A DNA stretch of 64,000 nucleotides, from positions 171,364 to 235,363 of the IMG/VR virus record IMGVR_UViG_3300009370_001221. One strand, given 5' to 3'. Under the pieces are notes generated by a model that saw nothing but the letters and a program-made list of their open reading frames with translations, did not search any database and was not told the origin of the DNA. Position numbers and translations under genes: made by a program. Below are positions 5,926 to 51,124 of the stretch, one piece after another (positions within the stretch are counted from its first letter, which is position 1; each line of letters starts with the position of its first letter).

Positions 5926-5968
5926 AAATTTCGCCACACCAGGTAGTTTATTTGGGTGTGACTCGGCC

Positions 5969-17921: not shown

Positions 17922-18601
17922 TCCTCTATGTGGTATACATAATCTCTATTAAACGGATCGGGCATACGCCGCCTCCACAATGCTTCTGCTAATGTATAGT
18001 CATTGCCTCCTTCTTCCATTCTGTCACCAAAGAATGTGATAGGAGTATTGTCAAAATCACGTAGTATTTGTGACTTATCCATACCAAGTTGTGCTATGTC
18101 TAAACCAGTCTCACCACCAACTGTTGCATATACTTCTTCAAACTGTTTATTAAACTGGTCCGCAATGCGATATCTTTCACGGGTTCGTTTATCATATTTG
18201 ACATACTCTCTGCGTTCTTCACTGTTCGCATTGCGTCCTACTATGCTAAAGTTAAGCATACCTGTGCGGTATTCAAAATGATTGCCAGTGCGTAACGGAA
18301 AATTACTAACTGCTAGGTGTGCCGACAACCATTTCTCTTGCTCATCAGTTATCCTAAACTCATTATGCCATACTTCTACACCATTTTCCCATACACTACT
18401 ACCTGAGCAGTTATAGCATCGCTTAATAGCATTGATTATATCCTCTCCTACTTGTTCTAGTGTTTTAGGATAGTCACTACCAGTAACTAAATGTACTTCG
18501 TGGCTTAAACAAAAGTCTATAAACCACTTTTCAAACGTGGGGTCAATTTTACTCCTGCTAGGAGTTAATGTTCCATCTACATCAAAAATAAATGCTCTCA
18601 T
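17876..18601 (-). CDS. HAD-IIB hydrolase, phosphomannomutase-like
   Basis: FDVDGTLTP, LVTGSD, N.S..GR, FFGDR...GGNDY. Confidence 0.85.
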   Translation of the reverse strand: MRAFIFDVDGTLTPSRSKIDPTFEKWFIDFCLSHEVHLVTGSDYPKTLEQVGEDIINAIKRCYNCSGSSVWENGVEVWHNEFRITDEQEKWLSAHLAVSNFPLRTGNHFEYRTGMLNFSIVGRNANSEERREYVKYDKRTRERYRIADQFNKQFEEVYATVGGETGLDIAQLGMDKSQILRDFDNTPITFFGDRMEEGGNDYTLAEALWRRRMPDPFNRDYVYHIEDWEHTWRTLENLTKS

Positions 18602-32811: not shown

Positions 32812-33141
32812 TTACATCCATAAGTCTGTGTAGTGCTTTCCAAACAATGCAAATCCGTCTTTAGTGTCTTGCCAACGCTCATCAGTCCAATAGTCTATAT
32901 CACTGTCTGTATCTCCGACAACATTCTCGAAAGCAATAATCATTTTATCAATTGCATCGGACCAATCTTCAAATTCCTCAAAGTCTTGTGGATAACTTTG
33001 CGAGTTATCTCGCAATTGTTCTAGAGCAGGAATAATTATTAATGCTAATGTGTGATCCAATGCCCATGTATCCCATGGGTGTATTTCTACATCAATGTCA
33101 AAACTGCCATCATTTTGCGGCTCACCAATGTCAACTCTCAT
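32812..33141 (-). CDS. hypothetical protein
   Basis: WDTW.LD.TLA.II.P.L..L motif. Confidence 0.7.
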   Translation of the reverse strand: MRVDIGEPQNDGSFDIDVEIHPWDTWALDHTLALIIIPALEQLRDNSQSYPQDFEEFEDWSDAIDKMIIAFENVVGDTDSDIDYWTDERWQDTKDGFALFGKHYTDLWM

Positions 33142-33488
33142 TTTATTTTCCTCGGCCTTCCCTCATCATCAAGGGCAACATTTACAAAATCTCCACATGC
33201 TACTCTAGTTTTACCTACATATACATCAATGTGTACAGTTGCAGATGTTGTCCCTAACTTTACAATGTGTCCATAACAAGAGACTAAATCTCCTATTTGT
33301 ACACACTTAAAAAATTCTATATTATTAACTGCTCGGGTAGCACTCTTTCCTTCTGGTGCTATATGTGCAGATGCCAAGTCCATTAAACCCATAAGCCAGC
33401 CACCAAATATATCGCCCCGAGCATTGGTGTCTCGCGGCATTGCTGATACTTGTATAACTAATTTGCCTAGTAATTCGTTAAAAGCCAT
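33138..33488 (-). CDS. acyl-CoA thioesterase (YciA/hotdog fold)
   Basis: MPRDTNARGDIFGGWLM..MD, F...V..GD.V, DDEGRPR. Confidence 0.88.
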   Translation of the reverse strand: MAFNELLGKLVIQVSAMPRDTNARGDIFGGWLMGLMDLASAHIAPEGKSATRAVNNIEFFKCVQIGDLVSCYGHIVKLGTTSATVHIDVYVGKTRVACGDFVNVALDDEGRPRKIK

Positions 33489-34003
33489 TTAATTGTCCTT
33501 GGATATAACTCATGTTCTACTTTGTGTATTCGTTGTTCTAAATCCTCTAAACTATCATGGTTGAGTATGGGAACTCTTATTTGCTCTATAACAGAGCCAG
33601 TATCCATTCCCTCATCTACATAATGTACTGTAACGCCGGTCTCATTAACACCTGCGTCAAATGCTTGCTTAATAGCACCCGCCCCCTTGAACTCTGGAAG
33701 TAAAGATGGATGAATGTTGATAATGTGCGATTCCCAGCGTTGTACGAAACCAGGGCTCAAGAGTCGCATAAAGCCGGCGAGTACTATTAAGTCTATTTTG
33801 TATTCTTCACATATATTTGTTGTTCTATGTTCTAATCGTTTAAGGCTAGACAATACATACGTAGGTATTCCTGCCTCTTCTGCTCTAGTCAATCCATAGG
33901 CATTAGGCTTGTCAGACAAAACATACTTAACAGGCAAGTTTGCGTCTATAATTGCCTGCAAGTTTGTTCCTGAACCAGATAGTAATACAACTATTCCTGA
34001 CAC
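33467..34003 (-). CDS. purN: phosphoribosylglycinamide formyltransferase
   Basis: SGSGTNLQA, LAGFMR, NIHPSLLP, TGVTVHYV..GMDTG. Confidence 0.9.
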   Translation of the reverse strand: MSGIVVLLSGSGTNLQAIIDANLPVKYVLSDKPNAYGLTRAEEAGIPTYVLSSLKRLEHRTTNICEEYKIDLIVLAGFMRLLSPGFVQRWESHIINIHPSLLPEFKGAGAIKQAFDAGVNETGVTVHYVDEGMDTGSVIEQIRVPILNHDSLEDLEQRIHKVEHELYPRTIKWLLTNY

Positions 34004-36566: not shown

Positions 36567-36823
36567 TATTGTATTACCGTGCCATCTTTTTGTTTAATTG
36601 CTACTGCCATTTCAATTCCTTCTGGAGTTAATTCGACATAATCTTCATACATTTCTTCTGAAATATCAGAAGAATCAACACCAAATAGTAGTAATAATGA
36701 ACCAACTGATATCTCAGTTATGCCTTCATTTCTGCATTCCAATAGAACTTTTAACATAAGTTCTTCTATTTTTGGATCATTTTGTTTTACGGGCAAGTTG
36801 CTTAAATATTCTGGTATGTCCAT
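36566..36823 (-). CDS. hypothetical protein
   Basis: ORF in operon. Confidence 0.6.
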   Translation of the reverse strand: MDIPEYLSNLPVKQNDPKIEELMLKVLLECRNEGITEISVGSLLLLFGVDSSDISEEMYEDYVELTPEGIEMAVAIKQKDGTVIQ

Positions 36824-37662
36824 TATGTTCCCCAGGCGTTTCCAAATAAATCGGAATGTAGTCTTGGACTGTATTTAAGTCCGTATTTCATTGCTAGATC
36901 TGCAACGTAGCGTGAATTAAAGGAATAATCTTCGTAGCATCCGCCTACTGGCATTACATATACTGGACAATTTACTCCAGCACTTCTGTATGCCTCTACA
37001 GCCTCCAGCACTTCATTAATACCCTCTTCATTATCTATCACGAATTTAAAATACATATCTGATTTTTGAACGGCAGAATATTCTTTTGCTACGTCTGGTT
37101 TAATAGCATCCGACCATATTTCGCCACTTGCTGATAGTTTAGGACTACAAGACCAAGTTATCCATGGCCTGTCAGTACCAGCAAAAAAGTCATTCCATCG
37201 TAATTCTTGTGTTGTATTTGTCTCAAATGTCATGTGCTTTAAACTACTCATTCTTGGATGCTTTAATAATGGCTCATATATACGTTGCCATAACATAGGT
37301 TCACCGCCTGTTACAACTAAATGTATTTCTTCCCATTGATTGCGCGGTGTTATATCTAATAAATCTGTTACTACGCCGTCTATGTCAGTTGTTGTAGCAA
37401 ATCGTTTAAAACGCGGATCCCAACTAGCATAACTATCACAACCTGTTTTAACTAATGGTAATCCATCCATTGCGGTATAATCATCTGGATCAACCCACAA
37501 CCGCTCTTCACTTACCTGCCGTTGTCCAGCACTAACCTCTGGCATTCCAAAGCCTTGGCATTTGAAGTTACAACCAAATAAACGTAGGAATACACTTGGT
37601 GTTCCTACCCATCTACCTTCGCCTTGTAGGCTGTAGAATATTTCAGTATATCTAACTTTCAT
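36823..37662 (-). CDS. queE: 7-carboxy-7-deazaguanine synthase (radical SAM)
   Basis: EIFYSLQGEG..VG.PSVFLR..GCNF.C...GCDS, TGGEP, ETN, SPKL, SPRLH..LFGN. Confidence 0.92.
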   Translation of the reverse strand: MKVRYTEIFYSLQGEGRWVGTPSVFLRLFGCNFKCQGFGMPEVSAGQRQVSEERLWVDPDDYTAMDGLPLVKTGCDSYASWDPRFKRFATTTDIDGVVTDLLDITPRNQWEEIHLVVTGGEPMLWQRIYEPLLKHPRMSSLKHMTFETNTTQELRWNDFFAGTDRPWITWSCSPKLSASGEIWSDAIKPDVAKEYSAVQKSDMYFKFVIDNEEGINEVLEAVEAYRSAGVNCPVYVMPVGGCYEDYSFNSRYVADLAMKYGLKYSPRLHSDLFGNAWGT

Positions 37663-37912
37663 CTTTCTTTTGTTGCTCCATCCATTCTTTCATATCACGT
37701 TTATAGTGTGGTCCGAACCAATGTCGCATTGCCTCTATATGTTTTTTCTCACGTTCTTTTTCATTCTTTTCATGCTCATTTACTATTATAACAATATTCT
37801 TCAAATTGTCAATAGTTACATCTTCTTTTGGCGCACGATAATAATGTGGCTCTTTAAAGTTCTTTAGACTATTTTCCGCAAGTTCTTTAATTTTTTCTAA
37901 TTCATCTTGCAT
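37652..37912 (-). CDS. hypothetical protein
   Basis: ORF in operon. Confidence 0.55.
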   Translation of the reverse strand: MQDELEKIKELAENSLKNFKEPHYYRAPKEDVTIDNLKNIVIIVNEHEKNEKEREKKHIEAMRHWFGPHYKRDMKEWMEQQKKDES

Positions 37913-39056
37913 AACTTTCTATTCCGCCTTCTCTGTGTATGTCCAATGTTAGGCAATGTAGTCCACCATCCCAAAAGAATCTATGTCTAAACGGTGCTAC
38001 TATAGGTTCTATATTGTGTGATCTAAACCATTTAAATAAGTCTTTATTTTCTGTTAAGCATAATACTGTTTCAGGATTTATTACTAATACGTTTACGTCC
38101 CATACTGTTTCCTCACAAAAACCTACCCAATCACTAAACCAGTTATCCACAAAACTAATAAGATCATCATTATGTTCCTCACCAGGAATCCACCATTTAC
38201 CTCTTACCTTGTCTCTAACTTCTAAAAATGGTGACATATTAGACCACTGTGCATCAGGCAAATAATATACGTCCCAACTAGGAAAGTATTTTTTAAAATT
38301 TAATGCTTCTCCGTTACTAATCCAAACGCCAGGTTTAATTGGATTATATATACCATCACTATGTCCATCATTGAAAGCAGTTATTATAGTATAATCTTTT
38401 AATTGCTTTTTAAAATAGTTATAGATATCTATTGGTAACCCATCTAATATTATAGTGTCTCCAAGTCTAACAATACTAGGAGCATCGTTACTATTTCCAA
38501 ATGGAAGATCATCTATAATATTTCCATCGTATTTGTGTAGTTTATTAAATAATGGTTCTAGTGCCGCTATCGTTGCTGGGAAATCTCCGTGATCCTTGCG
38601 TACATCTTTTCTTGTAAGCCTGTATATTGAATCTTTAATAACAATTTGTTCATCTCTTACCATGAGTGGAGGACGAGTTAAGTCACCTGGAAATTCATGT
38701 ATATTGTAATTGTCTAGATATTCTGTAACACCATTTATATCTTTAAATTTAGGCCATTTTTGTAATACTAAATCTCTACGCACTTCCAAGTTATCATCTA
38801 AACATTCTCGCCCTACTTTGTATACATTATACATATTTTCAAAGTCAAATACTTTAGGTCGATTGACTTTTACATTGTACTTCTCTAGTATTTCTCGTAT
38901 GTTCTCTAAATCTTCTATAGTTTCTTCTGTTATTTGTCGCAGAACATTTCTAACACTATTATTTTCTATATAATCAAAAAAGTCAGGACGATAACAATCA
39001 CCAAGCCAACATTCAACTAATGGCTGAAATCCTGTGTTGCAATTTATTACAGCCAA
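37902..39056 (-). CDS. amidinotransferase (pentein superfamily, glycine/inosamine-phosphate amidinotransferase-like)
   Basis: L...V.V.RP, RD..IVI, HSDG, NVL.I, FWDGGLHCLTLD. Confidence 0.8.
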   Translation of the reverse strand: MAVINCNTGFQPLVECWLGDCYRPDFFDYIENNSVRNVLRQITEETIEDLENIREILEKYNVKVNRPKVFDFENMYNVYKVGRECLDDNLEVRRDLVLQKWPKFKDINGVTEYLDNYNIHEFPGDLTRPPLMVRDEQIVIKDSIYRLTRKDVRKDHGDFPATIAALEPLFNKLHKYDGNIIDDLPFGNSNDAPSIVRLGDTIILDGLPIDIYNYFKKQLKDYTIITAFNDGHSDGIYNPIKPGVWISNGEALNFKKYFPSWDVYYLPDAQWSNMSPFLEVRDKVRGKWWIPGEEHNDDLISFVDNWFSDWVGFCEETVWDVNVLVINPETVLCLTENKDLFKWFRSHNIEPIVAPFRHRFFWDGGLHCLTLDIHREGGIESYAR

Positions 39057-39523
39057 CCTTTAAAGCCAGCATCAGGGTTAGTATAAATGGAACTATTCTT
39101 ATCATTTTCTCTAGACTCTACACTAATAACCCATGCTCGTCCTCTTGTACGTTCCCGCAACCATTCATCTGCCCACATACAAATACGCATAGCAGTTCCT
39201 TCCATACCTGGTCCTTCTTCTTGTACAATTAATTTACATACACCCGCATCGTGCATTGCTTGAAATGTTTCCATCCACGGATCATCATGATCAACTACAA
39301 ATGTATGATCATAATTTTCTTCTAACCATTGTTTTACTCCATCCAAGTCACCATAATCAACAAGGAATCCTTCCTTTGTCATTGTCTGTGCGCCAAATAC
39401 AAAGTGAAAACTACGACTATAACCGTGTATTAAATGGCAATTGCCATCGTGTTTGTGCTGTCTATGAGCACACGGAAAGTTCCAAAAACTTTTCGTTGAT
39501 GTAAATTCTGGTACGTCACTCAT
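39047..39523 (-). CDS. queD: 6-carboxy-5,6,7,8-tetrahydropterin synthase
   Basis: CAHR...HDGNCHLIHGY, VDYG, DH, E.T...I, E..KNS. Confidence 0.88.
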   Translation of the reverse strand: MSDVPEFTSTKSFWNFPCAHRQHKHDGNCHLIHGYSRSFHFVFGAQTMTKEGFLVDYGDLDGVKQWLEENYDHTFVVDHDDPWMETFQAMHDAGVCKLIVQEEGPGMEGTAMRICMWADEWLRERTRGRAWVISVESRENDKNSSIYTNPDAGFKGWL

Positions 39524-39532
39524 TGCTCTCTC

Positions 39533-39901
39533 CTAATCTATAATTACCATTCTACATAACCAAACTGGTTCATTTTTCTCTGTGTCCCAATGCGAATATT
39601 CTGCAGAGTCAGAATCTGTCCCGCACGTTTTATCTAACCACTGTCTAACTGTTAATCCCTCTTTACAAGCATGGCAAGATGGTATTAATGCGGCACAACA
39701 GTATCGCCCATCTCCATCTGATGGTGGTACAACCTCATCAATTGGCTCACATTGCTCACCAGTGAGTGTATCCATTCCAAGTACTCCCCAACATGCTTTG
39801 CCTTTTTCTGTCTCACCCCTATCACAACCTGCCAAATCAAAGCATAATAGTATCATTACTACCATGCCCAATATATACTGTGTTCTTTGCTTCATTACCA
39901 A
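39533..39901 (-). CDS. Cys-rich lipoprotein
   Basis: lipobox LAGC after a hydrophobic segment. Confidence 0.65.
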   Translation of the reverse strand: MVMKQRTQYILGMVVMILLCFDLAGCDRGETEKGKACWGVLGMDTLTGEQCEPIDEVVPPSDGDGRYCCAALIPSCHACKEGLTVRQWLDKTCGTDSDSAEYSHWDTEKNEPVWLCRMVIID

Positions 39902-40434
39902 TTCCTATTATACCACCAACATTCCCATGGAAATACGACCCACGATGGATCTTCTGTTTTGTTAATTTCACGAGCATTGAATGCTATGTCTTTAAACTCA
40001 CTGCCCGCGTTATTAAACAATACAGCAAATCTGATATTACGTTTCCATAATGCTTTGTTTTCATCAGGCATATGATATCCCTTCCCATAATGATGAAATA
40101 AATGTGGCTCTATAGTATTTTCCCAATCATTTACCATCCATTTGAAAGTTGCGCCAGTGTCATTAATATCATCTATGATAAGAATCTGTTTGCCTTCTAA
40201 TGCATCCAATGGTATTTCAGAATTAGATTCTTGTTGTACATTATCACGTAACCTAACATCTTGTATAACCATAGGACGATTGAGATAGTGACTTAACATT
40301 ACAGCAGGCAACATACCGCCTCGTGGTATGCCTACTATATAATCAGGCACCCAATTGTCTGCGTTCATTTGATGGCAAATGTCTAATACATACGATTTGA
40401 CATCTTGTGTATTAACATCTATCATTTTTGTCAT
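39895..40434 (-). CDS. type I phosphoribosyltransferase (purine PRT-like)
   Basis: VGIPRGG..PA..LSH, ILIIDDINDTGAT, WVVFPWE. Confidence 0.88.
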   Translation of the reverse strand: MTKMIDVNTQDVKSYVLDICHQMNADNWVPDYIVGIPRGGMLPAVMLSHYLNRPMVIQDVRLRDNVQQESNSEIPLDALEGKQILIIDDINDTGATFKWMVNDWENTIEPHLFHHYGKGYHMPDENKALWKRNIRFAVLFNNAGSEFKDIAFNAREINKTEDPSWVVFPWECWWYNRNW

Positions 40435-40691
40435 TACTTCAACTCCTGTTGTTGATTATCATCCTCTAATAGAGGAAAGTGTTTGGCCTCATATGCCTCA
40501 ATAAGTTCCATCAGTGTCAGCAGTTCCTCAACCCTTTTTAGGGCAGCTTTGTATTCTGCATCAGTTTCAATTGGTTTGTTGCTTGTCATATGTGTTCTGT
40601 CCTTCGTAAATTCTTGGTGCATCTTTTCAAAAGCTTCGACAACCTTTGGATCGTTCATCCACTGCTTTTTAAGTTTGGTAATACTAGTCAT
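40434..40691 (-). CDS. small protein resembling the N-termini of HigA-type antitoxins
   Basis: PIETDAEYKAALKRVEEL...L...IEAYEAKHFP. Confidence 0.55.
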   Translation of the reverse strand: MTSITKLKKQWMNDPKVVEAFEKMHQEFTKDRTHMTSNKPIETDAEYKAALKRVEELLTLMELIEAYEAKHFPLLEDDNQQQELK

Positions 40692-40703
40692 GTTACAATG
40701 TTT

Positions 40704-40809
40704 ACAGTTTTTATCTGCATCTCGTCCTTGGGCACTACCCCTATACGCAACTTAATCGTGGCTAATAGTGCTTGCAATACGACAGACCGGGTAACTGAAA
40801 ACCGGAAAA
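40704..40809 (-). ncRNA. putative structured RNA, copy 1 (family not recognised)
   Basis: ~105-nt near-identical repeat of 63718..63822; nested stems; substitutions keep pairing via G-U on the minus strand. Confidence 0.6.
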
Positions 40810-40817
40810 TATATCTC

Positions 40818-40997
40818 TTACCCCTCTTCCCAATGGCGATAATAAAAATGTTTACCAAGGGCATCTATTTCCTGTTGAGGATAACCATTCTCAACAAGCC
40901 ATTTTTTTACATCCTCTACACCTTCTGGTAACGGTTTAGGAAATCCATATCTCCAACCAGAAGGAGGATCAATCATTTTAATCTTCTTTTTTGTCAT
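40818..40997 (-). CDS. small hypothetical protein (MTKKKIKMIDPPSGWRYGFPK...)
   Basis: 59-aa ORF with ATGA overlap on the folE stop. Confidence 0.65.
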   Translation of the reverse strand: MTKKKIKMIDPPSGWRYGFPKPLPEGVEDVKKWLVENGYPQQEIDALGKHFYYRHWEEG

Positions 40998-41674
40998 GAT
41001 TTGTGTACTAACTGCATAAACTCTGCTCTATGTGCCGAGTCTGTTTTGTATCGTCCACCTAATTTACTTGTGATAGTATATGAACCTGTGTCCTCTACAC
41101 CTCTATGCTTAACACAGAAGTGAGCGGCGTCAATTACCACAGCAACCTCTTCAGTATCTAAAATAAAACTGAGTGCGTGGTAAATTTGTTCTGTTAAACG
41201 TTCTTGTATTTGTGGTCGTTTACTAAAGTATTCTACAATCCTGTTTAATTTGCTTAAACCCAATACTTTGTGTTTCGGAATATATCCTACGTGTGCCTTG
41301 CCATCAATAGCAACTAAATGATGCTCGCAAAAAGAAGATACTTGTATGTTCCTTTCTACAACCATCTCATCGTAGTCTATTTTGTTTGCTACTGCTGTAC
41401 ATTTGGGAAATGCATCTGGACTTAAACCCCAAAATATTTCATTAACATACATTTTAGCAACACGTTTTGGCGTATCCATTAAACTATCGTCTGTTAAATC
41501 CATTCCCACAATCTCAAGAACTTCTTCCATTCTACGTTCGATTGCTTCTATTTTTTCTGTTCTTGAAAGTGTATACAGACTTGAAGTGACAGGCGTTTCA
41601 AGGCCTAACTTTGATAAATGTTCGTGAACTTGCTGACCCAGATGAGAGTCAGTCTTTGTTTTGTTATAACTCAT
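40994..41674 (-). CDS. folE: GTP cyclohydrolase I
   Basis: DTPKRVAKM, SFCEHH, GLSKLNR, RPQIQERLT, H.CV..RG. Confidence 0.96.
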   Translation of the reverse strand: MSYNKTKTDSHLGQQVHEHLSKLGLETPVTSSLYTLSRTEKIEAIERRMEEVLEIVGMDLTDDSLMDTPKRVAKMYVNEIFWGLSPDAFPKCTAVANKIDYDEMVVERNIQVSSFCEHHLVAIDGKAHVGYIPKHKVLGLSKLNRIVEYFSKRPQIQERLTEQIYHALSFILDTEEVAVVIDAAHFCVKHRGVEDTGSYTITSKLGGRYKTDSAHRAEFMQLVHKS

Positions 41675-41731
41675 TTTCCTTCCTTACTCGGTTGTTGTTT
41701 TACATCAGTTACCTTTGTGTAACTCTGCTAA

Positions 41732-41739
41732 TATTTATA
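41732..41739 (-). promoter_or_regulatory. T4-type late promoter motif TATAAATA upstream of folE
   Basis: exact TATAAATA; also overlaps the stop of the upstream gene. Confidence 0.4.
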
Positions 41740-42817
41740 TTTCTAGAAGCCACGGCGATAAAATATTGTCAAACATAATATCGGCACTTAAGAAATTATG
41801 TGTTAATACTTCTACTTGTTCGTCTAAATATTCCTTTTTTACAATGTCATAGTTGCTACATAGTGTAGTAATAAAGTCTTGTAAATCTTCTTTATGCTCT
41901 TGGTAATTCCCATAACTTTCAGTCCATACACTAGGATATTTGAATACATCCTTATACATTTCACTATAACTTGCTCTATCTGGAACAATAGGAATAGCGC
42001 CTGCTAAACATCCCTCCATCATACTAATACCCAAATTTTCATGTAGAGCACAACTAAACACCGCTTTTGCTTGTCCCATTGTTGCATAATAGTCTTCTTT
42101 ACTTAAATTTAAGTTTTGGGTAATTACAACATTATATGGAGTTAAATCAAGATCTTCTATAATTTCAGGTTGTTTATCTTCATTGTAACGATGCGGCCAC
42201 ATAATAGTATCTCGTTTAGGACTATTATAATATTGTTGCAATTGCTCTACAATAGGATTATGTGGTTGTCCACTGCGTATTGCTTTGCTGTGATATATGT
42301 CAGGTATTTCCAAGTTGTGTAAAAATATATCCTTATGGAAATTAGTTGCATAATAATTATAGTCACATGCCATAAACCATGATTTTTCCTGTAAATGTGG
42401 CCATGGTTTAGACATCTTTAGACCCAATATGTCAGTTGGATCGTATGCGCCTGCATGCCAAATACCGTGTATCTCTACAGGTATGTCAAGCAGTTCGCTC
42501 ATGTATTTGATGGGTGTTACAATGAAGTTCCAAGCGTCAGTAATAAGGAATTTGTCGCCGGGGAGGATGAGACCCTTGCTAAACAATTCGCTTACTCGCG
42601 CGGTTTGGCTAGCCTTGTACTCATTTGTTTTTCCGAAGTCAAGGAACGCACCGCTGGTGGTTTTATCTTCAACAGTAACCCCATCGATAGTTTCAACACA
42701 GTACTCTAAACTGTGTTCTGCTATTTTCTCTTCAAGAAGTGATGGAATATTATCGTACCATTGTTTCGTATAGCGTTGATCTATAGGCTCAATGGGTATA
42801 ATATAAATTGTATTCAT
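41735..42817 (-). CDS. GT-B (GT4-like) glycosyltransferase
   Basis: WPHR...DKQP, ENLGISMME (Ex7E), GAIPIVPDR.SY.E. Confidence 0.8.
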   Translation of the reverse strand: MNTIYIIPIEPIDQRYTKQWYDNIPSLLEEKIAEHSLEYCVETIDGVTVEDKTTSGAFLDFGKTNEYKASQTARVSELFSKGLILPGDKFLITDAWNFIVTPIKYMSELLDIPVEIHGIWHAGAYDPTDILGLKMSKPWPHLQEKSWFMACDYNYYATNFHKDIFLHNLEIPDIYHSKAIRSGQPHNPIVEQLQQYYNSPKRDTIMWPHRYNEDKQPEIIEDLDLTPYNVVITQNLNLSKEDYYATMGQAKAVFSCALHENLGISMMEGCLAGAIPIVPDRASYSEMYKDVFKYPSVWTESYGNYQEHKEDLQDFITTLCSNYDIVKKEYLDEQVEVLTHNFLSADIMFDNILSPWLLEI

Positions 42818-43245
42818 TGGTATAATCTTGTAATATCTTCTTCGTCACACTGGCTACCATATTGTACCTCTATAATGCTTAATTCCTGTCTTGAGGGATT
42901 AATCAATTGATGCCAAGTACCTGCTGGTATGACTAATGTTTCAGTTTCATGTAGTATAACAGTAGTGCTATTATCTTCTATTAAATCTTGCTCTACTTTT
43001 TTACTACCCCGTGGGTAATCTTCACTGAGTATTACCCTTGCTACGCCACTATTAACGCACCAAAATTCTTCTCTGTGTTCATGCTTTTGAAAACTTAAAC
43101 ACATGCTAGGACTAACTACAAGTTCTTTCACTTTAACGCCGTTAAAGTCACCTAAAACTTTATAATGTCCCCATACGCGATATTCTTTTAGAACTTCTTC
43201 AAGAATTTCGGTAATTTTGGCGTTTGCGGTCTCTGTTGTGGTCAT
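42814..43245 (-). CDS. cupin, mannose-6-phosphate isomerase (ManC C-terminal)-like
   Basis: R.WG.Y.VL, L.FQKH.HR.E.W.V..G, IP.G.WH.L.N, IIEVQYG....E.DI.R. Confidence 0.85.
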   Translation of the reverse strand: MTTTETANAKITEILEEVLKEYRVWGHYKVLGDFNGVKVKELVVSPSMCLSFQKHEHREEFWCVNSGVARVILSEDYPRGSKKVEQDLIEDNSTTVILHETETLVIPAGTWHQLINPSRQELSIIEVQYGSQCDEEDITRLYQ

Positions 43246-43420
43246 ATTTCTTATATCCTGGCCAGTAACGTGCTTTGCCTGTGTCCTTCCATTTAAGGAA
43301 ATCATCATAAGGAGTTCTTTCCTTATACATATGTGCTTCGTTAAAAACACGCCCGTAAATTCTACAGAAATCTCGGTACTCATCAAGGTCGTCAAAGACC
43401 TTTTTGACTGCTTCTTTCAT
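43199..43420 (-). CDS. hypothetical protein
   Basis: IF.DL..YRDFCR.YG.VFNE..MY. Confidence 0.65.
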   Translation of the reverse strand: MKEAVKKVFDDLDEYRDFCRIYGRVFNEAHMYKERTPYDDFLKWKDTGKARYWPGYKKYDHNRDRKRQNYRNS

Positions 43421-43425
43421 TGTTG

Positions 43426-43872
43426 TTATTCTGCGGCTAAAGTTATAGGATAGACGCAATGGCAGCCGTTTTCACCATCCTCGCCTACTTCAATCCATAC
43501 TTCTCTATCTGGATATCTGTCATTAATTTCCATATAAAGATCATCAGCAATCATCTCACAAGACTTATAGTCTAATTCCAATGTTGTGCCATACAAACCT
43601 TCCAACCAACGTTTAAATTGAATAAATTCAATATCTCTGTCGTCGTGGAATACTTGTATAGTAACCTTAAAGTGGAATGTGTGGCGATGTGGATATCCGA
43701 GAAAGGATACATCATACTCATCACCAGTTGCTAATGCGGGATCTTCTAATGCGGCCGGGTATTTGTGTATACCCTCTTTTTGAAATTTAACCCAAATCAT
43801 TTTGGGCATTTGTTGAACTTTTTCTGTTCTCAGTTGACGTCTATGATCGTCTATGTTGAATACTTCGTTCAT
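43426..43872 (-). CDS. T-fold QueD paralogue (DpdL-like candidate)
   Basis: LGYPHRHTFHF (LxxxHRHxF), DRDIEFIQFK, SCEM.A, V.EDGENG. Confidence 0.65.
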   Translation of the reverse strand: MNEVFNIDDHRRQLRTEKVQQMPKMIWVKFQKEGIHKYPAALEDPALATGDEYDVSFLGYPHRHTFHFKVTIQVFHDDRDIEFIQFKRWLEGLYGTTLELDYKSCEMIADDLYMEINDRYPDREVWIEVGEDGENGCHCVYPITLAAE

Positions 43873-43874
43873 AA

Positions 43875-44213
43875 TTAACTCGCAGGTTCAGTTGATACGT
43901 GTTCTTCTTTCCCATCTACCCCTTCCCACGATTTGTGGTCGGGCATTGGGTCCTTCTGCTCCGTTATGTTGGGCCATACTTTAGAATATTTGTCGTTGAA
44001 TTCTGCCCAATCAATATTGCCAGTTTGTGTATATTCATTGTCTGGCACAATGGCTTCAATAGGACATTCAGGCTCACAAATGCCACAGTCAATGCATTCG
44101 TCTGGGTGTATAACCAGCATATTTTCGCCTTCGTAGAAACAGTCTACAGGACATACTTCTACACAGTCCGTTAATTTACATTTAACGCAATTTTCGTTAA
44201 CTATATAAGTCAT
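43875..44213 (-). CDS. fdxA: 7Fe ferredoxin (FdxA type)
   Basis: [33 protein letters not shown]. Confidence 0.92.
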
Positions 44214-44219
44214 AACACA

Positions 44220-44248
44220 AGTATACTACGACCACTTGATATTGTCAA
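44220..44248 (-). promoter_or_regulatory. sigma70-like promoter upstream of the fdxA/T-fold/GT/folE run
   Basis: TTGACA-17-TATACT. Confidence 0.65.
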
Positions 44249-44492
44249 GCAAAGACGAGTGTCCTTTTTTATAATTTATTACTATATTTCCTTGGCCATC
44301 AACGCCGTCCCATGTGAAATCTTCCCCATATATTAGACCTAATGTGCCTAAATGATTACATATCATAGCAACGGCTTCAACGGTTCTATAGTTGGCGTTT
44401 AGTGCGCCGCCTTCTATAGATTTACCCGTTGTTTCGCCTATCCATCTATCACGGACAGTAACACTATTAATTTTGAATTTTCCAATTTCCAT
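44226..44492 (-). CDS. hypothetical protein
   Basis: ORF in operon. Confidence 0.55.
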   Translation of the reverse strand: MEIGKFKINSVTVRDRWIGETTGKSIEGGALNANYRTVEAVAMICNHLGTLGLIYGEDFTWDGVDGQGNIVINYKKGHSSLLDNIKWS

Positions 44493-45130
44493 CAGTATAC
44501 TGATTTAATTTTATCTGCTATTCCATATTTTACTGCTTCTTCAGCATTGAGCCACACGTCTTGCGGTGGTAGTAATACTTCACGAATCTTCTTTTCAGAT
44601 AATCCAGTACATTTCTTATAATGCATTAACATACGTTCTGTACTCATCTCAAATTCTCTTACAACTGCGAACAATTCGTGTTCTTTACCTCTACTGCCCC
44701 AACTATATTGATGACTTAATATGCTAGTATTTGGGGTAATTGTTCTATGACCTTTTTGTCCAGCCATAAATGTTAGTACGCCACAAGAGGCAATCATACC
44801 TAGTCCTACTGTGTGGACAGGGATCGCTGATCCTTTCATACAATCAATTAACGCAAATGCGTGGGCAACCTCACCACCAGGACTATTAATCATTAGTGTG
44901 AGATGTTTTGGTTTAAATTTTGAGGGCAATACATTTTTCTCAAGTATAAATCTAATTGCCATACCACAGGACTCTTCATTAAAGTCAGTCATGAACATAT
45001 GAATATTATTATCATATAGTGGATCACCGCTAGGTTGCGGCCCACGTGGTCGTTGTGGTTTTGGTCCTGCTTCTGTGTCTTTATCTTCTGCTTCTTTCTT
45101 GACTACCTTCTTCTTTTTCTTTACTGCCAT
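44492..45130 (-). CDS. clpP: ClpP-like protease subunit
   Basis: INSPGG.V..AFA.ID.M, G.IASCG, HQ.S.G, D.WL.AEEA..YG..D. Confidence 0.88.
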   Translation of the reverse strand: MAVKKKKKVVKKEAEDKDTEAGPKPQRPRGPQPSGDPLYDNNIHMFMTDFNEESCGMAIRFILEKNVLPSKFKPKHLTLMINSPGGEVAHAFALIDCMKGSAIPVHTVGLGMIASCGVLTFMAGQKGHRTITPNTSILSHQYSWGSRGKEHELFAVVREFEMSTERMLMHYKKCTGLSEKKIREVLLPPQDVWLNAEEAVKYGIADKIKSVY

Positions 45131-45235
45131 GTTTTTGCTCCTCTATATCATTGATTCGTTTCTCTATAGGAAATCGAATAATATTGTATTGTTTGTTTAG
45201 TTCTATACGTTGCTGTATATACTCTAAAAGTGTCA

Positions 45236-46714
45236 TTACTCAAACAAGTTATGAAATGATTCCTCTGCACTATATGTTTCTTTGGCCATCACTTCATCCT
45301 TTCCCATTGGTTCTATGCCTAATTCATCTGCATAGGCTTCAGAAGTATTTACCCCTTGGATGCGTGTAAACCATCTACTGTATTTCTCTACTTCAGCAAT
45401 GGCATTAGCATGATCTTTCTTAGAAAATATCTCATGAATTACCTCTGCTATATGAGCGCCATTTGGTGCTACTAATTGTTTAGGCATTATTCCTTGATCA
45501 TAACATTCATTTGCTCGTTGTGTTGCTAAAATATGCAAGTAAACATTGTGTCCCATTTGTAATGCATAACTAAAACTATCCCAACTCGTTCTTCCTTCCT
45601 TGCCTATTTTGTTTAAATCACCTGGTCCATATGGGCAAACGTCTCGCATTTCTATACGCTCACTAATAGGACTGGGTTCCCAATCTCGATCAGGAAACTC
45701 AATATTATAATCAAATATCCTTGTATCTTTAGCATACTTTTTGTCATCTATTGCCTTAAGCATTTTATAAGTCCAACCCTTGCGTAAATGGTCAGTGTGT
45801 ATGCTAGTATACATTGTGCCATATGCTGTTGCTAAAAACGGTGACGCACAATCATAAGACAGTATAATATTTGGGTTTATTTTGTCGTGTATTTCACGTT
45901 GGAATGCTGTTAGTACAATACTCCAAAGCAGTTCACCTGTACCCAAATAATGCATCCATTCTGTCTCACCTAAAAAGCCATCCTCACGCATCTTTAATAG
46001 TCTGCGTATAGCAATTTCTACATCCTTTTTATTAATAGAACTTAATGCCCATCCCTCAAAGTTTGCCTTCTCGCCTGTGCTGTATGGTTTAACTGCCTCA
46101 TACCATTCCTCACATTGTTTCCAATTGTTACCTTGTAATACATTTAGAAACTTTGTCGCACCTGGCTCACGTGCTTGTGCGAAGTAATCATTATTGTTTA
46201 ACGTGCCTTGTAAACACTTTTGCCAAGTATCTAATCCATGTAAGTGTGCATGAGTAACACTAAATGTAGGTAAGTCAAGCACCATAGAGTAATCAAATGT
46301 GCCTTCTAAAAATCGTAATACTTTTTCTCGTATTGCGTCAGTTTTCTTATCAACACCATATGGCTCTAACCACTCTCCCATCCACACGCCTTTAGATATT
46401 TGGAATCCACCACTGTCACCCACTAATACAGTGTCTGGTGCTCTATTGCGGACCATGTCCTCTTTAGCAACAAACTTATCCAAATTCATATCAGCATGTC
46501 CAGCAGAATACAATGCCCAAGGATACTTAAAATATCCTTCTTTAGTGTTAAGGAAATTTAAGCCTTCTATACCACTAGTAAAACGTGATGGAATTCTGTC
46601 TTGAGGTACAAAATCTTCGTATCGTTGTTTGCCTACATACGCGGCATAAAAACTACTAATGGCTGGTAAGTAGATTGCATAATTTCCTTGTGTTTCTACA
46701 AGGTTCTCTCTCAT
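45236..46714 (-). CDS. dpdA: TGT-fold guanine transglycosylase, probably DNA-targeting (DpdA-like)
   Basis: DSGGFQ, VLD.P, VLQG, H.LG, DCASP, HN; clusters with folE/queD/queE and follows the sliding clamp. Confidence 0.8.
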   Translation of the reverse strand: MRENLVETQGNYAIYLPAISSFYAAYVGKQRYEDFVPQDRIPSRFTSGIEGLNFLNTKEGYFKYPWALYSAGHADMNLDKFVAKEDMVRNRAPDTVLVGDSGGFQISKGVWMGEWLEPYGVDKKTDAIREKVLRFLEGTFDYSMVLDLPTFSVTHAHLHGLDTWQKCLQGTLNNNDYFAQAREPGATKFLNVLQGNNWKQCEEWYEAVKPYSTGEKANFEGWALSSINKKDVEIAIRRLLKMREDGFLGETEWMHYLGTGELLWSIVLTAFQREIHDKINPNIILSYDCASPFLATAYGTMYTSIHTDHLRKGWTYKMLKAIDDKKYAKDTRIFDYNIEFPDRDWEPSPISERIEMRDVCPYGPGDLNKIGKEGRTSWDSFSYALQMGHNVYLHILATQRANECYDQGIMPKQLVAPNGAHIAEVIHEIFSKKDHANAIAEVEKYSRWFTRIQGVNTSEAYADELGIEPMGKDEVMAKETYSAEESFHNLFE

Positions 46715-47496: not shown

Positions 47497-48441
47497 TTAT
47501 GGTGCTGTTACTGATGTTATGTTATGCTGGCCTACTTCCGGTATATCGCCCTCATTAAGAAATCCAACACTTGGAACTCGTTTAATTCCTGGTTGGAATT
47601 TACCAGGTTTTTGAAGTATAACCCAACTCATTCTAAATTGAAAATCTTCTTGTTCCATCATATCAAATCCGTTTTTATTAGCCAGTCCTTCCATTAAGTG
47701 ATTTGTCATATAACAATAATACGAGTCTTCAAATTTTTCAGCAGATTTTTCCATTAAACAGTTAGCATAAGTTAAAAACGCAATGCCGCCAGGACTTAAT
47801 ACTTTATAAATACCTGCCAAATATTTGTCAATCATGTCATACGGTAAGAATTCAAAATGATATAAACTAAACACAAATGAAAATGCTTTTTGAGGAAGAT
47901 AACTAAAATCCATACTATCTTCTAATTGATATACCCGTAATCTACGTTGATATATTGGATTAAAATGCTCTGCAACATGTTGAATCATATTTAAATCAGG
48001 ACCTACAAGATATAATGGATCAAATCCACCCAATTCTTTAGTCCAATAATGAGATCGTGGTCCAATTTCACAACCAGGATATTGAAAATCAACATACTTT
48101 TTTATTTTTGAACAAACGGTTAATTTAAATTCAGGTGTCCAATAGTCATCTTCTATGAGTCGTACATCCATACGTCTTTTATTTTCATAGTTTGCATAAC
48201 TTTGCTTTAGACGTGGAGGCTGTATTTCTTTATTAAATATTTCTTCTAATTTTTTATTAGTATTTGCTATTTCTTCATCAACAAATTTCATACAATGCAC
48301 AAAACTATCTAATGTTAAATGTGAATGTTCTATAACTGTTTGCCTATATAATTCTCTAATAGTATTATAGTTTTCATGTATAGCACTAGTATCAAGTTTA
48401 TCTAATAATTCTCGTTCTCTAATATATTCTAATAAGTTCAT
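47497..48441 (-). CDS. class I SAM-dependent methyltransferase-like protein
   Basis: EIGP motif I-like, F.F.FS...F..L, Y..L.PGG...LTY. Confidence 0.65.
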   Translation of the reverse strand: MNLLEYIRERELLDKLDTSAIHENYNTIRELYRQTVIEHSHLTLDSFVHCMKFVDEEIANTNKKLEEIFNKEIQPPRLKQSYANYENKRRMDVRLIEDDYWTPEFKLTVCSKIKKYVDFQYPGCEIGPRSHYWTKELGGFDPLYLVGPDLNMIQHVAEHFNPIYQRRLRVYQLEDSMDFSYLPQKAFSFVFSLYHFEFLPYDMIDKYLAGIYKVLSPGGIAFLTYANCLMEKSAEKFEDSYYCYMTNHLMEGLANKNGFDMMEQEDFQFRMSWVILQKPGKFQPGIKRVPSVGFLNEGDIPEVGQHNITSVTAP

Positions 48442-51095: not shown

Positions 51096-51124
51096 ATTAT
51101 AACAGATAAGTACAAAAATTACAA
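51096..51124 (-). promoter_or_regulatory. sigma70-like promoter upstream of DNA polymerase
   Basis: TTGTAA-17-TATAAT. Confidence 0.55.

What the first reader, a model, noticed from the sequence alone, without database searches (positions are those of the whole stretch)
36823..46714. Non-canonical 7-deazaguanine DNA hypermodification cluster lacking QueC but carrying extra tailoring enzymes
Seen on one strand: dpdA-like TGT, ferredoxin, T-fold LxxxHRHxF protein, cupin, GT-B glycosyltransferase, folE, PRTase, queD, amidinotransferase and queE, next to the clamp and polymerase. No queC, queF or arcS is present in the window. Known: FolE-QueD-QueE make CDG from GTP; DpdA exchanges 7-deazaguanines into DNA; known end products include dPreQ0, dPreQ1, dG+, dADG, dCDG, dDG, mdPreQ1 and fdPreQ1. 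Inference: the pathway branches at CDG and the interleaved enzymes could give a derivative outside that list (glycosylated or amidino-bearing). The ferredoxin could supply electrons to QueE.
Basis: partly seen in the sequence, partly recalled or inferred. Interest (0 to 1): 0.85.

Follow-up and report, generated by a model that had tools for sequence, protein, structure and literature searches.

The report
Phage 7-deazaguanine DNA cluster with glycosyltransferase
This phage operon replaces guanine in its DNA with 7-deazaguanine by the known QueC-free "DpdL" route. It also carries a sugar-transferring enzyme that sits beside DpdL in almost every related locus examined and that no paper found here describes, so the final DNA base may carry a sugar.

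Summary
The gene cluster is real, lies on the minus strand at 36823-46714, and has no queC or queF. The core (FolE, QueD, QueE, DpdL and a TGT-fold DpdA) is therefore the known route to 2'-deoxy-7-deazaguanine (dDG), not a new branch.

The new point concerns the GT-B gene. It is an intact GT4 enzyme with an EX7E motif and it is almost always found with DpdL and DpdA. Of 43 DpdL-seeded IMG/VR loci with at least 5 kb on both sides, 43 have DpdA, 42 have the GT and none has QueC. The same trio occurs in cultured phages (PA5oct, ACP17, Phosso, cyanophage BUCT-ZZ01) and in Magnetospirillum chromosomes. Different sugar-nucleotide genes sit next to it in different phages.

A purine phosphoribosyltransferase is a frequent partner. 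The amidinotransferase, ferredoxin and ClpP are lineage-specific. The amidinotransferase family mostly occurs in cyanophage-like contigs that show no deazaguanine genes within the fetched flanks.

No paper I found describes a glycosylated deazaguanine in DNA. PA5oct has a modified G of unknown structure. Verdict: a new variant of a known system, and directly testable.

The parts
45236..46714 (-). DpdA-like DNA-guanine transglycosylase, long form (492 aa)
   Evidence: No Pfam, NCBIfam or PHROG hit. AF2 model has pLDDT 83. The top 8 Foldseek PDB hits are all Z. mobilis TGT (E 5e-6 to 8e-4); after them comes a gap to generic TIM barrels. DSGGxQ (D100), HxLG and D288 are invariant in 21 homologues. 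Homologues include PA5oct gp168 (36%) and ACP17 gp123.
44492..45130 (-). ClpP-like protease (212 aa). Probably not part of the pathway.
   Evidence: PF00574, E 1e-30. Homologues recur in 8 of 80 DpdL loci.
44226..44492 (-). Small ORF (88 aa), function unknown
   Evidence: No family hit. Conserved only in close relatives.
43875..44213 (-). 7Fe ferredoxin, FdxA type (112 aa)
   Evidence: NCBIfam FdxA_Protbact, 158.8 bits against a cutoff of 135. Fer4 plus DUF3470. Present only in the window's clade.
43426..43872 (-). DpdL, a QueD paralogue and the predicted CDG decarboxylase (148 aa)
   Evidence: Motif LxxxHRHxF present. 31.5% identity to phiST CGPG_00067, 62% to ACP17 and 59% to PA5oct. Matches phrog_17812. 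The family was defined in PMC10516641.
43199..43459 (-). Conserved small ORF (86 aa as listed; in relatives it starts near MKEAVKK)
   Evidence: 48% identity at the same position in divergent locus L042. Present in 35 of 80 DpdL loci, in the gap between the DpdL and GT hits. Function unknown.
42814..43395 (-). Mannose-6-phosphate-isomerase-type cupin. The real start is probably Met51, near 43245.
   Evidence: PF01050, 85 bits, and Cupin_2. Matches the C-terminal part of GMP_PMI. Fused to a cytidylyltransferase-like domain in L045.
41735..42817 (-). GT-B / GT4-like retaining glycosyltransferase (360 aa)
   Evidence: AF2 pLDDT 89.6. Foldseek top hits are BshA, MshA, LmbT and glycogen synthase (E 8e-10); BGluT 5zer is at rank 50. 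E260 and E268 are invariant and form the EX7E motif. 752 homologues found. Co-occurs with DpdL and DpdA.
40994..41674 (-). GTP cyclohydrolase I, FolE (226 aa)
   Evidence: PF01227, 215 bits. NCBIfam equivalog, 304 bits against a cutoff of 202.
39895..40434 (-). Purine (6-oxopurine-type) phosphoribosyltransferase (179 aa)
   Evidence: PF00156, 48 bits. Nearest PDB sequences are purine PRTases 1vdm (4e-12), GpT-2 and HGPRT. Present in 28 of 43 full DpdL loci. The homologue in BUCT-ZZ01 is annotated as XGPRT.
39047..39523 (-). QueD-like CPH4 synthase (158 aa), with CxxxHGY in place of CxxxHGH
   Evidence: PF01242, 66.8 bits. phrog_2389, E 5e-33. The same HGY variant occurs in the QueD of phiST, ACP17 and L045.
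37902..39056 (-). Amidinotransferase-fold enzyme (384 aa), a lineage-specific accessory
   Evidence: PDB sequence hits to HsvA (1.8e-7), SxtG, StrB1 and AGAT across the C-terminal catalytic Cys. H232, D234 and H367 are invariant and C368 nearly so. Large viral family. Lies between QueD and QueE, as in L042, which has two copies.
37652..37912 (-). Small ORF (86 aa), function unknown
   Evidence: No family hit. Conserved only in close relatives.
36823..37662 (-). QueE-like radical-SAM CDG synthase (279 aa)
   Evidence: phrog_2076, E 7e-50. Matches NCBIfam QueE models below their cutoffs. C31, C35 and C75 are invariant, as are the Q13/E15 of the QGEG motif and the T118/G119/G120/P122 of the TGGEP motif.

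Best explanation
This is a phage operon for post-replicative replacement of guanine by a 7-deazaguanine, of the QueC-free DpdL type.

Proposed steps:
1. FolE, QueD and QueE convert GTP to 7-carboxy-7-deazaguanine (CDG). This follows from the established pathway.
2. DpdL, a QueD paralogue with LxxxHRHxF, removes the carboxyl group to give 7-deazaguanine. This was predicted by Cui et al. and has not been shown biochemically.
3. The long TGT-fold DpdA exchanges this base for G in DNA. This is inferred.
4. A GT4 glycosyltransferase that travels with DpdL and DpdA adds a sugar. The donor is probably manno-configured, because this phage encodes a PMI-type cupin beside the GT and a phosphomannomutase elsewhere in the window. 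The sugar goes either onto the free deazapurine before insertion or onto the base already in DNA. This step is inferred from co-occurrence only; the acceptor atom is unknown.
5. The purine PRTase most likely returns the displaced guanine to the GMP/GTP pool that feeds FolE. This is inferred.

The amidinotransferase, FdxA ferredoxin and ClpP are add-ons of this lineage with no assigned step.
For: Gene identities.

No QueC or QueF.

DpdL family and dDG in phiST: PMC10516641.

Co-occurrence of the genes:
- GT-seeded loci almost all carry DpdA, DpdL and FolE.
- Of 80 DpdL-seeded loci, 76 have DpdA, 76 the GT and 0 QueC. Of the 43 with at least 5 kb on both sides, 43 have DpdA, 42 the GT, 39 FolE, 28 the PRT and 26 QueE.
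- The trio is adjacent in ACP17 and PA5oct. It is found in the order DpdA-DpdL-GT in BUCT-ZZ01. In Phosso, DpdL and the GT are adjacent.
- A GT-DpdL-DpdA-QueD block lies in Magnetospirillum chromosomes, without FolE nearby and next to a CoiA-like nuclease-domain protein.

Sugar supply: different nucleotide-sugar gene sets flank the conserved GT in different phages. These are a PMI cupin, an NTase-cupin fusion, a SIS + GHMP kinase + NTP_transferase-HAD set, and a UDPG/GDP-Man dehydrogenase + SDR + DegT set. In L010 a divergent GT of the same family occupies the slot.

Experimental hints:
- PA5oct DNA resists G-containing restriction sites and carries a modified G of undetermined structure (PMC12191111).
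- Cui et al. could not obtain dDG from DpdA plus DpdL of ACP17 and suspected a missing enzyme.
- A glycosyltransferase (HuiG; the huimycin family's GTs are listed under PF13439) is proposed to glycosylate a free 7-deazaguanine-type base in huimycin biosynthesis.
Against: - No chemistry is available for any phage that carries the GT.
- 7-Deazaguanine has no hydroxyl group, so the linkage would have to be N- or C-glycosidic. That is unusual for a retaining GT4.
- The GT is very acidic (pI 4.7, net charge about -25), and its closest structures act on small molecules, not on DNA.
- phiST makes dDG without any GT.
- DpdL activity has never been demonstrated.
- The DpdA family here is only weakly related to phiST DpdA3.
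- Co-occurrence shows linkage, not the reaction.
- The 80 DpdL loci are the ones most similar to the query, so the counts describe this subfamily and not all DpdL.
Confidence: 0.6

Rival explanations
1. Plain dDG system. The operon makes exactly what phiST makes (dDG). The GT, cupin and PRTase do unrelated jobs, such as glycosylating a virion or host-surface component or making a pterin glycoside from the FolE/QueD product. They are only co-located in a replication-module gene block.
For: phiST, with DpdL and no GT, has 100% dDG. The GT's structural neighbours are small-molecule GT4 enzymes, including the pterin glucosyltransferase BGluT at rank 50. The GT is acidic. The window holds many other sugar genes far from the cluster.
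Against: The GT is adjacent to DpdL and DpdA in T4-like phages, jumbo phages, a cyanophage and bacterial chromosomes whose other genes differ. In Magnetospirillum the block GT-DpdL-DpdA-QueD stands without FolE. Every GT-seeded locus with enough flank carries DpdL.
Confidence: 0.22
2. Nucleotide-level route, as in tubercidin biosynthesis. The PRTase couples CDG or DG to PRPP. The deazapurine nucleotide is then processed, possibly with the phage GMP reductase at 57066-58130. It is either incorporated by the polymerase or used as an antimetabolite. The GT acts on this nucleotide or nucleoside.
For: Tubercidin clusters use CDG without QueC, together with PF00156 (PRTase), a decarboxylase and PF00478 (GMP reductase). 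The window has PF00156 inside the cluster and a bona fide GMP reductase 10 kb away. DpdL homologues sit next to QueD-QueE-FolE in Amycolatopsis, Kitasatospora and Streptomyces with neither DpdA nor GT.
Against: A TGT-fold DpdA with conserved catalytic Asp residues is present in 43 of 43 full loci, which argues for base exchange on DNA. The PRT is absent from about a third of loci. The GMP reductase is on the other strand and outside the conserved block. Guanine salvage explains the PRT more simply.
Confidence: 0.1
3. Amidino-bearing product. The amidinotransferase decorates the deazaguanine or its sugar. For example, it could amidinate an amino sugar, or place an amidino group at C7 to give an archaeosine-like base.
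For: The gene is embedded between queD and queE with overlapping stop and start codons. It holds the same position in the divergent L042, which has two tandem copies, and it lies near the PRT, FolE and QueE genes in L103. The catalytic His, Asp and Cys are conserved. The window also encodes a DegT aminotransferase, a dehydratase and an oxidoreductase that could make an amino sugar.
Against: It is present in only 1 of 80 DpdL-seeded loci. Most relatives are in cyanophage-like contigs, some beside psbA/psbD, with none of the cluster's genes in the fetched flanks. DG and CDG offer no amine at C7 for a classical amidinotransfer.
Confidence: 0.08

Closest known systems
Cellulophaga phage phiST dDG system (DpdA3, DpdL, FolE, QueD, QueE; Cui et al. 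2023, PMC10516641)
   Same: FolE, QueD (the same CxxxHGY variant), QueE and DpdL with LxxxHRHxF. No QueC. Located next to the DNA polymerase module.
   Different: phiST has no GT, cupin, PRTase, amidinotransferase or ferredoxin. Its DpdA3 is 259 aa and is not detected by the HMM of the 492-aa family. Its DpdL is only 31.5% identical.
Clusters of Pseudomonas jumbo phage PA5oct (gp162-gp168) and Acidovorax phage ACP17 (gp119-gp126)
   Same: The adjacent DpdA-GT-DpdL block plus QueE. PA5oct also has the PRT and ACP17 also has FolE and QueD. Both clusters lie beside the polymerase.
   Different: These clusters have no amidinotransferase, cupin, ferredoxin or ClpP. The GTs are annotated as hypothetical. 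The DNA product is unknown: PA5oct has a modified G of undetermined structure, and ACP17 is not among the phages whose DNA was analysed in Table 1 of Cui et al..
Huimycin and dapiramicin biosynthesis (HuiG glycosyltransferase acting on a free 7-deazaguanine-type base)
   Same: FolE, QueD and QueE together with a glycosyltransferase that is proposed to attach a sugar to a deazapurine base, at the 2-amino group. The huimycin family's GTs are listed under PF13439.
   Different: It is a secondary metabolite of actinomycetes. It uses QueC (preQ0) and an O-methyltransferase, and has no DpdA or DpdL. Homology between HuiG and this GT was not tested.
Tubercidin biosynthesis (CDG-based, QueC-free)
   Same: CDG is the branch point. 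It uses a PRTase (PF00156), a decarboxylation step and a GMP reductase family enzyme.
   Different: The decarboxylase there is UbiD-type, not a T-fold protein. The product is a free nucleoside. There is no transglycosylase.
T4 alpha- and beta-glucosyltransferases acting on hydroxymethylcytosine DNA
   Same: A phage-encoded GT-B enzyme that could put a sugar on a non-canonical DNA base as an anti-restriction measure. This is an analogy from general knowledge.
   Different: The GT families, the base and the chemistry (an O-glycoside on a hydroxymethyl group) all differ. Neither T4 enzyme appears in the top 50 structural matches.

Membership tests
TGT/DpdA superfamily | TGT-type TIM-barrel fold | tested here: met
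   AF2 pLDDT 83. The top 8 Foldseek hits are all Z. mobilis TGT (E 5e-6 to 8e-4, target-normalised TM about 0.54). The next hits have E > 0.02.
TGT/DpdA superfamily | Catalytic aspartates (DSGGFQ motif, and a second Asp after the HxLGxG strand) | tested here: met
   D100/S101/G102/G103/Q105, H255/L257/G258 and D288 are invariant in 21 homologues. A weak profile alignment to TGT covers the same stretch.
TGT/DpdA superfamily | Significant sequence match to the TGT family models | tested here: not met
   No Pfam, NCBIfam or PHROG hit. The family profile against PDB TGT sequences gives E 0.4-2 only.
DpdA3 subfamily (phiST CGPG_00065) | Detectable homology to phiST DpdA3 | tested here: inconclusive
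   hhalign probability 16%, E 0.0016, over 124 columns. The family HMM finds the ACP17, PA5oct and BUCT-ZZ01 proteins but not phiST DpdA3. The supplementary tables of Cui et al. are not held.
DpdL (predicted CDG decarboxylase) | LxxxHRHxF motif replacing the CxxxHGH of QueD | tested here: met
   The window has L-GYP-HRH-T-F. L58, H62, H64 and F66 are invariant in 8 DpdL sequences, including phiST.
DpdL (predicted CDG decarboxylase) | Homology to phiST CGPG_00067 and genomic company of FolE, QueD, QueE and DpdA without QueC | tested here: met
   tblastn gives 31.5% identity at E 3e-9. The family HMM matches the phiST protein at 2e-41. For the context.
DpdL (predicted CDG decarboxylase) | CDG decarboxylase activity | not testable with these tools
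   The activity has never been shown even for phiST or ACP17 DpdL.
QueE (radical-SAM CDG synthase) | Three cluster cysteines, a QGEG-type substrate motif and a GGE SAM motif | tested here: met
   C31, C35 and C75 are invariant; there is a 39-residue insert between the second and third. Q13 and E15 of the QGEG motif and T118, G119, G120 and P122 of the TGGEP motif are invariant. PHROG 2076 matches at E 7e-50. NCBIfam QueE models score below their cutoffs.
QueD (CPH4 synthase) | PTPS fold family and the CxxxHGH motif | tested here: inconclusive
   PF01242 scores 66.8 bits, above its cutoff. The motif is CxxxHGY, so the second His is missing. The same variant is in the QueD of phiST, which makes dDG. 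NCBIfam QueD scores 40 bits against a cutoff of 89.
GT4 retaining glycosyltransferases (GT-B) | GT-B two-Rossmann fold | tested here: met
   pLDDT 89.6. 151 PDB matches at E<=0.001, led by BshA, MshA, LmbT and PglA.
GT4 retaining glycosyltransferases (GT-B) | EX7E motif | tested here: met
   E260 and E268 are invariant in 21 to 23 homologues, with G263 between them.
GT4 retaining glycosyltransferases (GT-B) | Pfam Glycos_transf_1 above the gathering score | tested here: not met
   16.4 bits against a cutoff of 26.4.
Amidinotransferase (pentein/GME superfamily) | Catalytic Cys-His-Asp residues and overall homology | tested here: met
   PDB sequence hits to HsvA (1.8e-7), SxtG, StrB1 and AGAT over the C-terminal GGxHC segment. 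H232, D234 and H367 are invariant and C368 is conserved in at least 90%. The Atlas neighbours are named amidinotransferase. There is no Pfam hit, and the substrate is unknown.
Purine phosphoribosyltransferase | PRPP-binding PRT domain and nearest relatives that act on purines | tested here: met
   PF00156 scores 48 bits against a cutoff of 26. The PDB sequence matches at E <= 0.01 are all purine PRTases. NCBIfam XPRT is only 32 bits against a cutoff of 138, so the base specificity is open.

The most novel reading that the evidence does not exclude
Phages that carry the DpdA-DpdL-GT4 trio have a sugar-bearing 7-deazaguanine in their DNA, for example a mannosyl or heptosyl derivative. IMG/VR held at least 577 DpdL loci, and nearly all of the 80 examined carry the trio; cultured examples are PA5oct, ACP17, Phosso and cyanophage BUCT-ZZ01. 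This would be the first glycosylated purine known in any genome. The sugar would vary between phages according to the nucleotide-sugar genes beside the GT. In this phage lineage an amidinotransferase might decorate it further. A related GT-DpdL-DpdA-QueD block in Magnetospirillum, next to a nuclease-domain gene, could be a bacterial modification-restriction system that uses the same base.
Probability: 0.35. Interest if true: 0.9.

Novelty: new variant of a known kind. Interest (0 to 1): 0.72.

Why it matters
7-Deazaguanines are the only known family of guanine replacements in phage DNA, and eight side-chain variants are known. None of them carries a sugar.

The comparison made here has several consequences:
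- The DpdL branch, so far documented chemically only in Cellulophaga phages, is abundant in environmental phages.
- In the examined subfamily it is almost always coupled to a conserved GT4 enzyme that published pathway schemes omit.
- This may explain why DpdA plus DpdL alone gave no product in E. coli.
- It points to the identity of the unknown modified G of PA5oct, a phage that has been tested in airway infection models.
- It predicts a sugar-diversified purine modification, comparable to the glucosyl- and arabinosyl-hydroxymethylcytosines of T-even phages. That bears on restriction, on CRISPR, and on modification-dependent nucleases such as the END enzymes.

Cultured phages with the trio exist, so the question can be tested directly.

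Tried and rejected
- Megablast of the whole cluster against 50,697 phage records found nothing. The phage has no close cultured relative.
- Sequence-only searches for the DpdA (Pfam, NCBIfam, PHROGs, PDB phmmer) were blank. A profile against PDB gave only sub-threshold TGT hits. Structure prediction was needed.
- The supplementary tables of Cui et al. are not held. I could not see which DpdA subfamily they assign to ACP17.
- Net charge and pI as an indicator of DNA binding were uninformative, because DpdA itself is acidic in these phages.
- I considered the PurN-like gene (33467-34003) as a DpdN-type formyltransferase and rejected it. It scores as a true PurN equivalog (210 bits against a cutoff of 150), and there is no preQ1 pathway.
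- I considered whether the FolE, QueD and GT genes alone make a pterin glycoside. This is unlikely as the main role, because QueE, DpdL and DpdA accompany the GT everywhere.
- Literature searches for glycosylated deazaguanine in phage DNA found nothing. The library excludes most subscription journals, so absence is not proof.
- I did not search for ArcS. I could not inspect the remaining ~170 kb of the 235-kb source contig for queC.

Full report
**Observation.** The interval 36823-46714 is a run of co-oriented minus-strand genes directly downstream of a family-B DNA polymerase at 48438-51089.

- A 492-aa protein with a DSGGFQ motif (45236-46714).
- An FdxA-type 7Fe ferredoxin (43875-44213; NCBIfam 158.8 bits against a cutoff of 135).
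- A 148-aa T-fold protein with the sequence L-GYP-HRH-T-F (43426-43872).
- A mannose-6-phosphate-isomerase-type cupin (42814-43395; PF01050, 85 bits).
- A 360-aa glycosyltransferase candidate (41735-42817).
- FolE (40994-41674).
- A phosphoribosyltransferase (39895-40434).
- A QueD-like PTPS (39047-39523).
- An amidinotransferase-like protein (37902-39056).
- QueE (36823-37662).

The 243-aa "clamp" is unverified. It matches only PHROG 12062, of unknown function, and its PA5oct homologue is annotated as a structural protein. I found no gene in the interval interrupted by a stop.

**Absence of QueC and QueF.** No SGGxDS PP-loop motif occurs in any of the six frames of the 64-kb window. tblastn with E. 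coli QueC and QueF gives no hit at E<=1 in the window. ArcS was not searched for, and the rest of the 235-kb source contig could not be read.

**What the weakly annotated proteins are.**

- *DpdA-like protein.* It has no Pfam, NCBIfam, PHROG or PDB sequence match. An AlphaFold2 model built on 21 homologues has pLDDT 83. Its eight best PDB matches are all Zymomonas tRNA-guanine transglycosylase (E 5e-6 to 8e-4), followed by a gap to generic TIM barrels. DSGGxQ, HxLG and a later Asp (D288) are invariant in the family. It is therefore a TGT-fold enzyme with the catalytic aspartates in place. Its relation to the 259-aa DpdA3 of phiST is weak: hhalign gives 16% probability, and the family HMM does not find phiST DpdA3. 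The same HMM does find ACP17 gp123, PA5oct gp168 and a cyanophage protein.
- *Glycosyltransferase.* The 360-aa protein models at pLDDT 89.6 as a GT-B enzyme. Its best matches are retaining GT4 enzymes: BshA, MshA, LmbT, PglA and glycogen synthase. E260 and E268 are invariant and form the EX7E motif.
- *Phosphoribosyltransferase.* All its PDB sequence matches at E <= 0.01 are purine PRTases.
- *Amidinotransferase.* It matches HsvA, SxtG, StrB1 and AGAT across the catalytic Cys. H232, D234 and H367 are invariant and C368 nearly so.
- *QueE.* It keeps three invariant cysteines (with a 39-residue insert between the second and third) and the conserved residues of the QGEG and TGGEP motifs.
- *QueD.* It has CxxxHGY instead of CxxxHGH. 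The QueD of phiST, ACP17 and a marine T4-like phage have the same variant.

**Link to what is known.** Cui et al. [quoted passage not shown] They proposed a QueD paralogue with LxxxHRHxF, named DpdL, as the CDG decarboxylase, and a distant TGT, named DpdA3, as the inserting enzyme.

The window's 148-aa protein is a DpdL. It has the motif, and it is 31.5% identical to phiST DpdL, 62% to the ACP17 protein and 59% to the PA5oct protein. The core of the finding is therefore the known QueC-free dDG route.

**The new element.** The closest cultured-phage homologues of the DpdA are in the Pseudomonas jumbo phage PA5oct group. There the order is clamp-like gene, DpdA, a homologue of the GT (38% identity), DpdL, several small genes, PRT and QueE. 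ACP17 has QueD, FolE, DpdA, GT (32%), DpdL and QueE.

The GT family has 752 detectable members, many at 60-65% identity in marine metagenomes. I tested the linkage in both directions:

- *Seeded with the GT.* In 48 IMG/VR loci, nearly every locus with enough flank has a DpdA (one of two subtypes), DpdL and FolE. Most also have QueE, the PRT and a cupin or NTase-cupin fusion.
Of the 80 retained, 76 have DpdA, 76 the GT, 55 FolE, 40 the PRT, 33 QueE and 0 QueC. Of the 43 with at least 5 kb on both sides, 43 have DpdA, 42 the GT, 39 FolE, 28 the PRT and 26 QueE.
- *Cultured phages and bacteria.* Profile searches find the order DpdA-DpdL-GT in Synechococcus phage BUCT-ZZ01. DpdL and the GT are adjacent in Sinorhizobium phage Phosso. 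A GT-DpdL-DpdA-QueD block lies in Magnetospirillum chromosomes, including an isolate genome. It has no FolE nearby and sits beside a CoiA-like nuclease-domain gene.
- *The exception.* phiST has DpdL but no GT.

The 80 DpdL loci are those most similar to the query, so the counts describe this DpdL subfamily.

**Sugar supply.** The genes next to the conserved GT differ between phages:

| Phage or locus | Sugar genes near the GT |
|---|---|
| This window | PMI-type cupin; eukaryotic-type phosphomannomutase at 17876-18601 |
| L045 (marine T4-like) | cupin fused to a cytidylyltransferase-like domain, plus a second such NTase |
| L091 | SIS isomerase, GHMP kinase and an NTP_transferase-HAD fusion; together these resemble a GDP-heptose pathway |
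| L056 | UDP-glucose/GDP-mannose dehydrogenase, an SDR and a DegT fragment |
| L010 and relatives | a divergent GT of the same family in the same slot |

This is the pattern expected if one conserved acceptor is decorated with different sugars.

**Accessory genes.**

- The amidinotransferase lies inside the cluster only in the window's clade, in the divergent L042 (two tandem copies between QueD and QueE) and in L103. Its other relatives lie in cyanophage-like contigs, some beside psbA/psbD, with none of the cluster's genes in the fetched flanks.
- The ferredoxin is confined to close relatives.
- A ClpP homologue recurs in 8 of 80 loci.

**Mechanism proposed.**

1. GTP is converted to CDG by FolE, QueD and QueE. 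This is the established pathway.
2. CDG is converted to 7-deazaguanine by DpdL. This was predicted and never shown. Cui et al. obtained no dDG from DpdA plus DpdL of phiST or ACP17 in E. coli and suspected missing enzymes.
3. The DpdA exchanges the base into DNA. This is inferred.
4. The GT4 glycosylates either the free base or the DNA base. This is inferred from linkage alone. The acceptor atom is unknown, because 7-deazaguanine has no hydroxyl group.
5. The PRTase salvages the displaced guanine into the GTP pool. This is inferred.

There is a chemical precedent for step 4. In huimycin biosynthesis the glycosyltransferase HuiG is proposed to attach GlcNAc to the 2-amino group of a free 7-deazaguanine-type base, and the family's GTs are listed under PF13439. 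PA5oct DNA resists enzymes with G in their sites, and its modified G has not been identified.

**Alternatives.**

1. The product is plain dDG and the GT is unrelated to it. This is supported by phiST, by the small-molecule GT4 structural neighbours and by the acidic GT. The linkage across unrelated genomes argues against it.
2. A tubercidin-like nucleotide route uses the PRTase and perhaps the GMP reductase at 57066-58130. DpdL-QueD-QueE-FolE clusters without DpdA or GT in actinomycetes show that DpdL can also work in non-DNA contexts. Here, however, a DpdA is always present.
3. An amidino-bearing product. The gene position supports it and the gene's rarity argues against it.

**Literature.** I found no paper describing a glycosylated deazaguanine in DNA, or the GT as part of the Dpd phage pathway. 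The library lacks most subscription journals, so this is not proof of absence.

**Verdict.** The cluster is a member of the known DpdL/dDG kind, with a conserved glycosyltransferase partner that I did not find described, and with lineage-specific extras. It is a new variant of a known kind and can be tested directly in cultured phages.

Noticed in passing
window 11678-15578 (-): A GFO/IDH/MocA oxidoreductase, a DegT/DnrJ/EryC1 sugar aminotransferase and an NAD epimerase/4,6-dehydratase lie in a row, followed by ThyX. This is an amino-sugar nucleotide module that could feed the GT or serve something else.
   Followed up: partly
window 17876-18601 (-): Eukaryotic-type phosphomannomutase (PF03332). 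It has a 48%-identical homologue right next to the GT/FolE genes in L056. Together with the PMI cupin it points to a mannose-type donor.
   Followed up: partly
window 57066-58130 (+): A bona fide GMP reductase (NCBIfam 502 bits against a cutoff of 397). The same enzyme family acts on deazapurine nucleotides in tubercidin biosynthesis. Here it may simply rebalance purines after guanine release.
   Followed up: partly
window 33138-34003 (-): A true PurN equivalog (210 bits against a cutoff of 150) next to a 4HBT thioesterase. It resembles DpdN only at the superfamily level, and there is no preQ1 pathway for it to act on.
   Followed up: yes
window 1527-6658 (+): Several paralogous ORFs begin with a 'GGDSFTFGSEL'-like motif, which looks like the SGNH hydrolase type. 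Among them is a NodU-like carbamoyltransferase at 4324-5925. The repeated family was not analysed.
   Followed up: no
window 51119-52207 (-): A Glu/Leu/Phe/Val dehydrogenase homologue lies directly downstream of the DNA polymerase. This is an unusual phage auxiliary gene.
   Followed up: no
L199 5176-11675 (Magnetospirillum aberrantis SpK chromosome); also L198, L200, L201, L203, L212: A bacterial chromosomal block: CoiA-like nuclease-domain protein, GT, DpdL, DpdA, a small ORF and QueD, with no FolE nearby. It may be a bacterial modification-restriction island that uses the same trio.
   Followed up: partly
L207, L209, L211, L215, L217, L223 (Amycolatopsis, Kitasatospora, Haloactinopolyspora): DpdL homologues (31-36% identity) lie directly beside QueE and FolE, and in most of these loci QueD, with neither DpdA nor GT. 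These are probably deazapurine natural-product clusters. They give independent context support for DpdL acting at the CDG stage.
   Followed up: no
L042 9938-12502 and 4513-5967: A divergent relative has two tandem amidinotransferase paralogues between QueD and QueE, and a 484-aa radical-SAM protein downstream of the GT.
   Followed up: no
L022 6808-9120; L033 8833-11311: Amidinotransferase homologues sit next to psbA/psbD-like genes in cyanophage-like contigs (the psbA/psbD identification is by eye from the N-terminal sequences). The role of this large viral family is unknown.
   Followed up: no
window 36823-37662; alignment A9: QueE of this clade carries an insert of about 39 residues between the second and third cluster cysteines (CX3CX39C). 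The insert is shared with PA5oct, L045 and L042 and is absent from phiST and ACP17.
   Followed up: no
L001 5614-10840 (PA5oct): The PA5oct DNA polymerase is split by a Hef-like homing endonuclease gene. The window's orthologue (883 aa) is intact.
   Followed up: no
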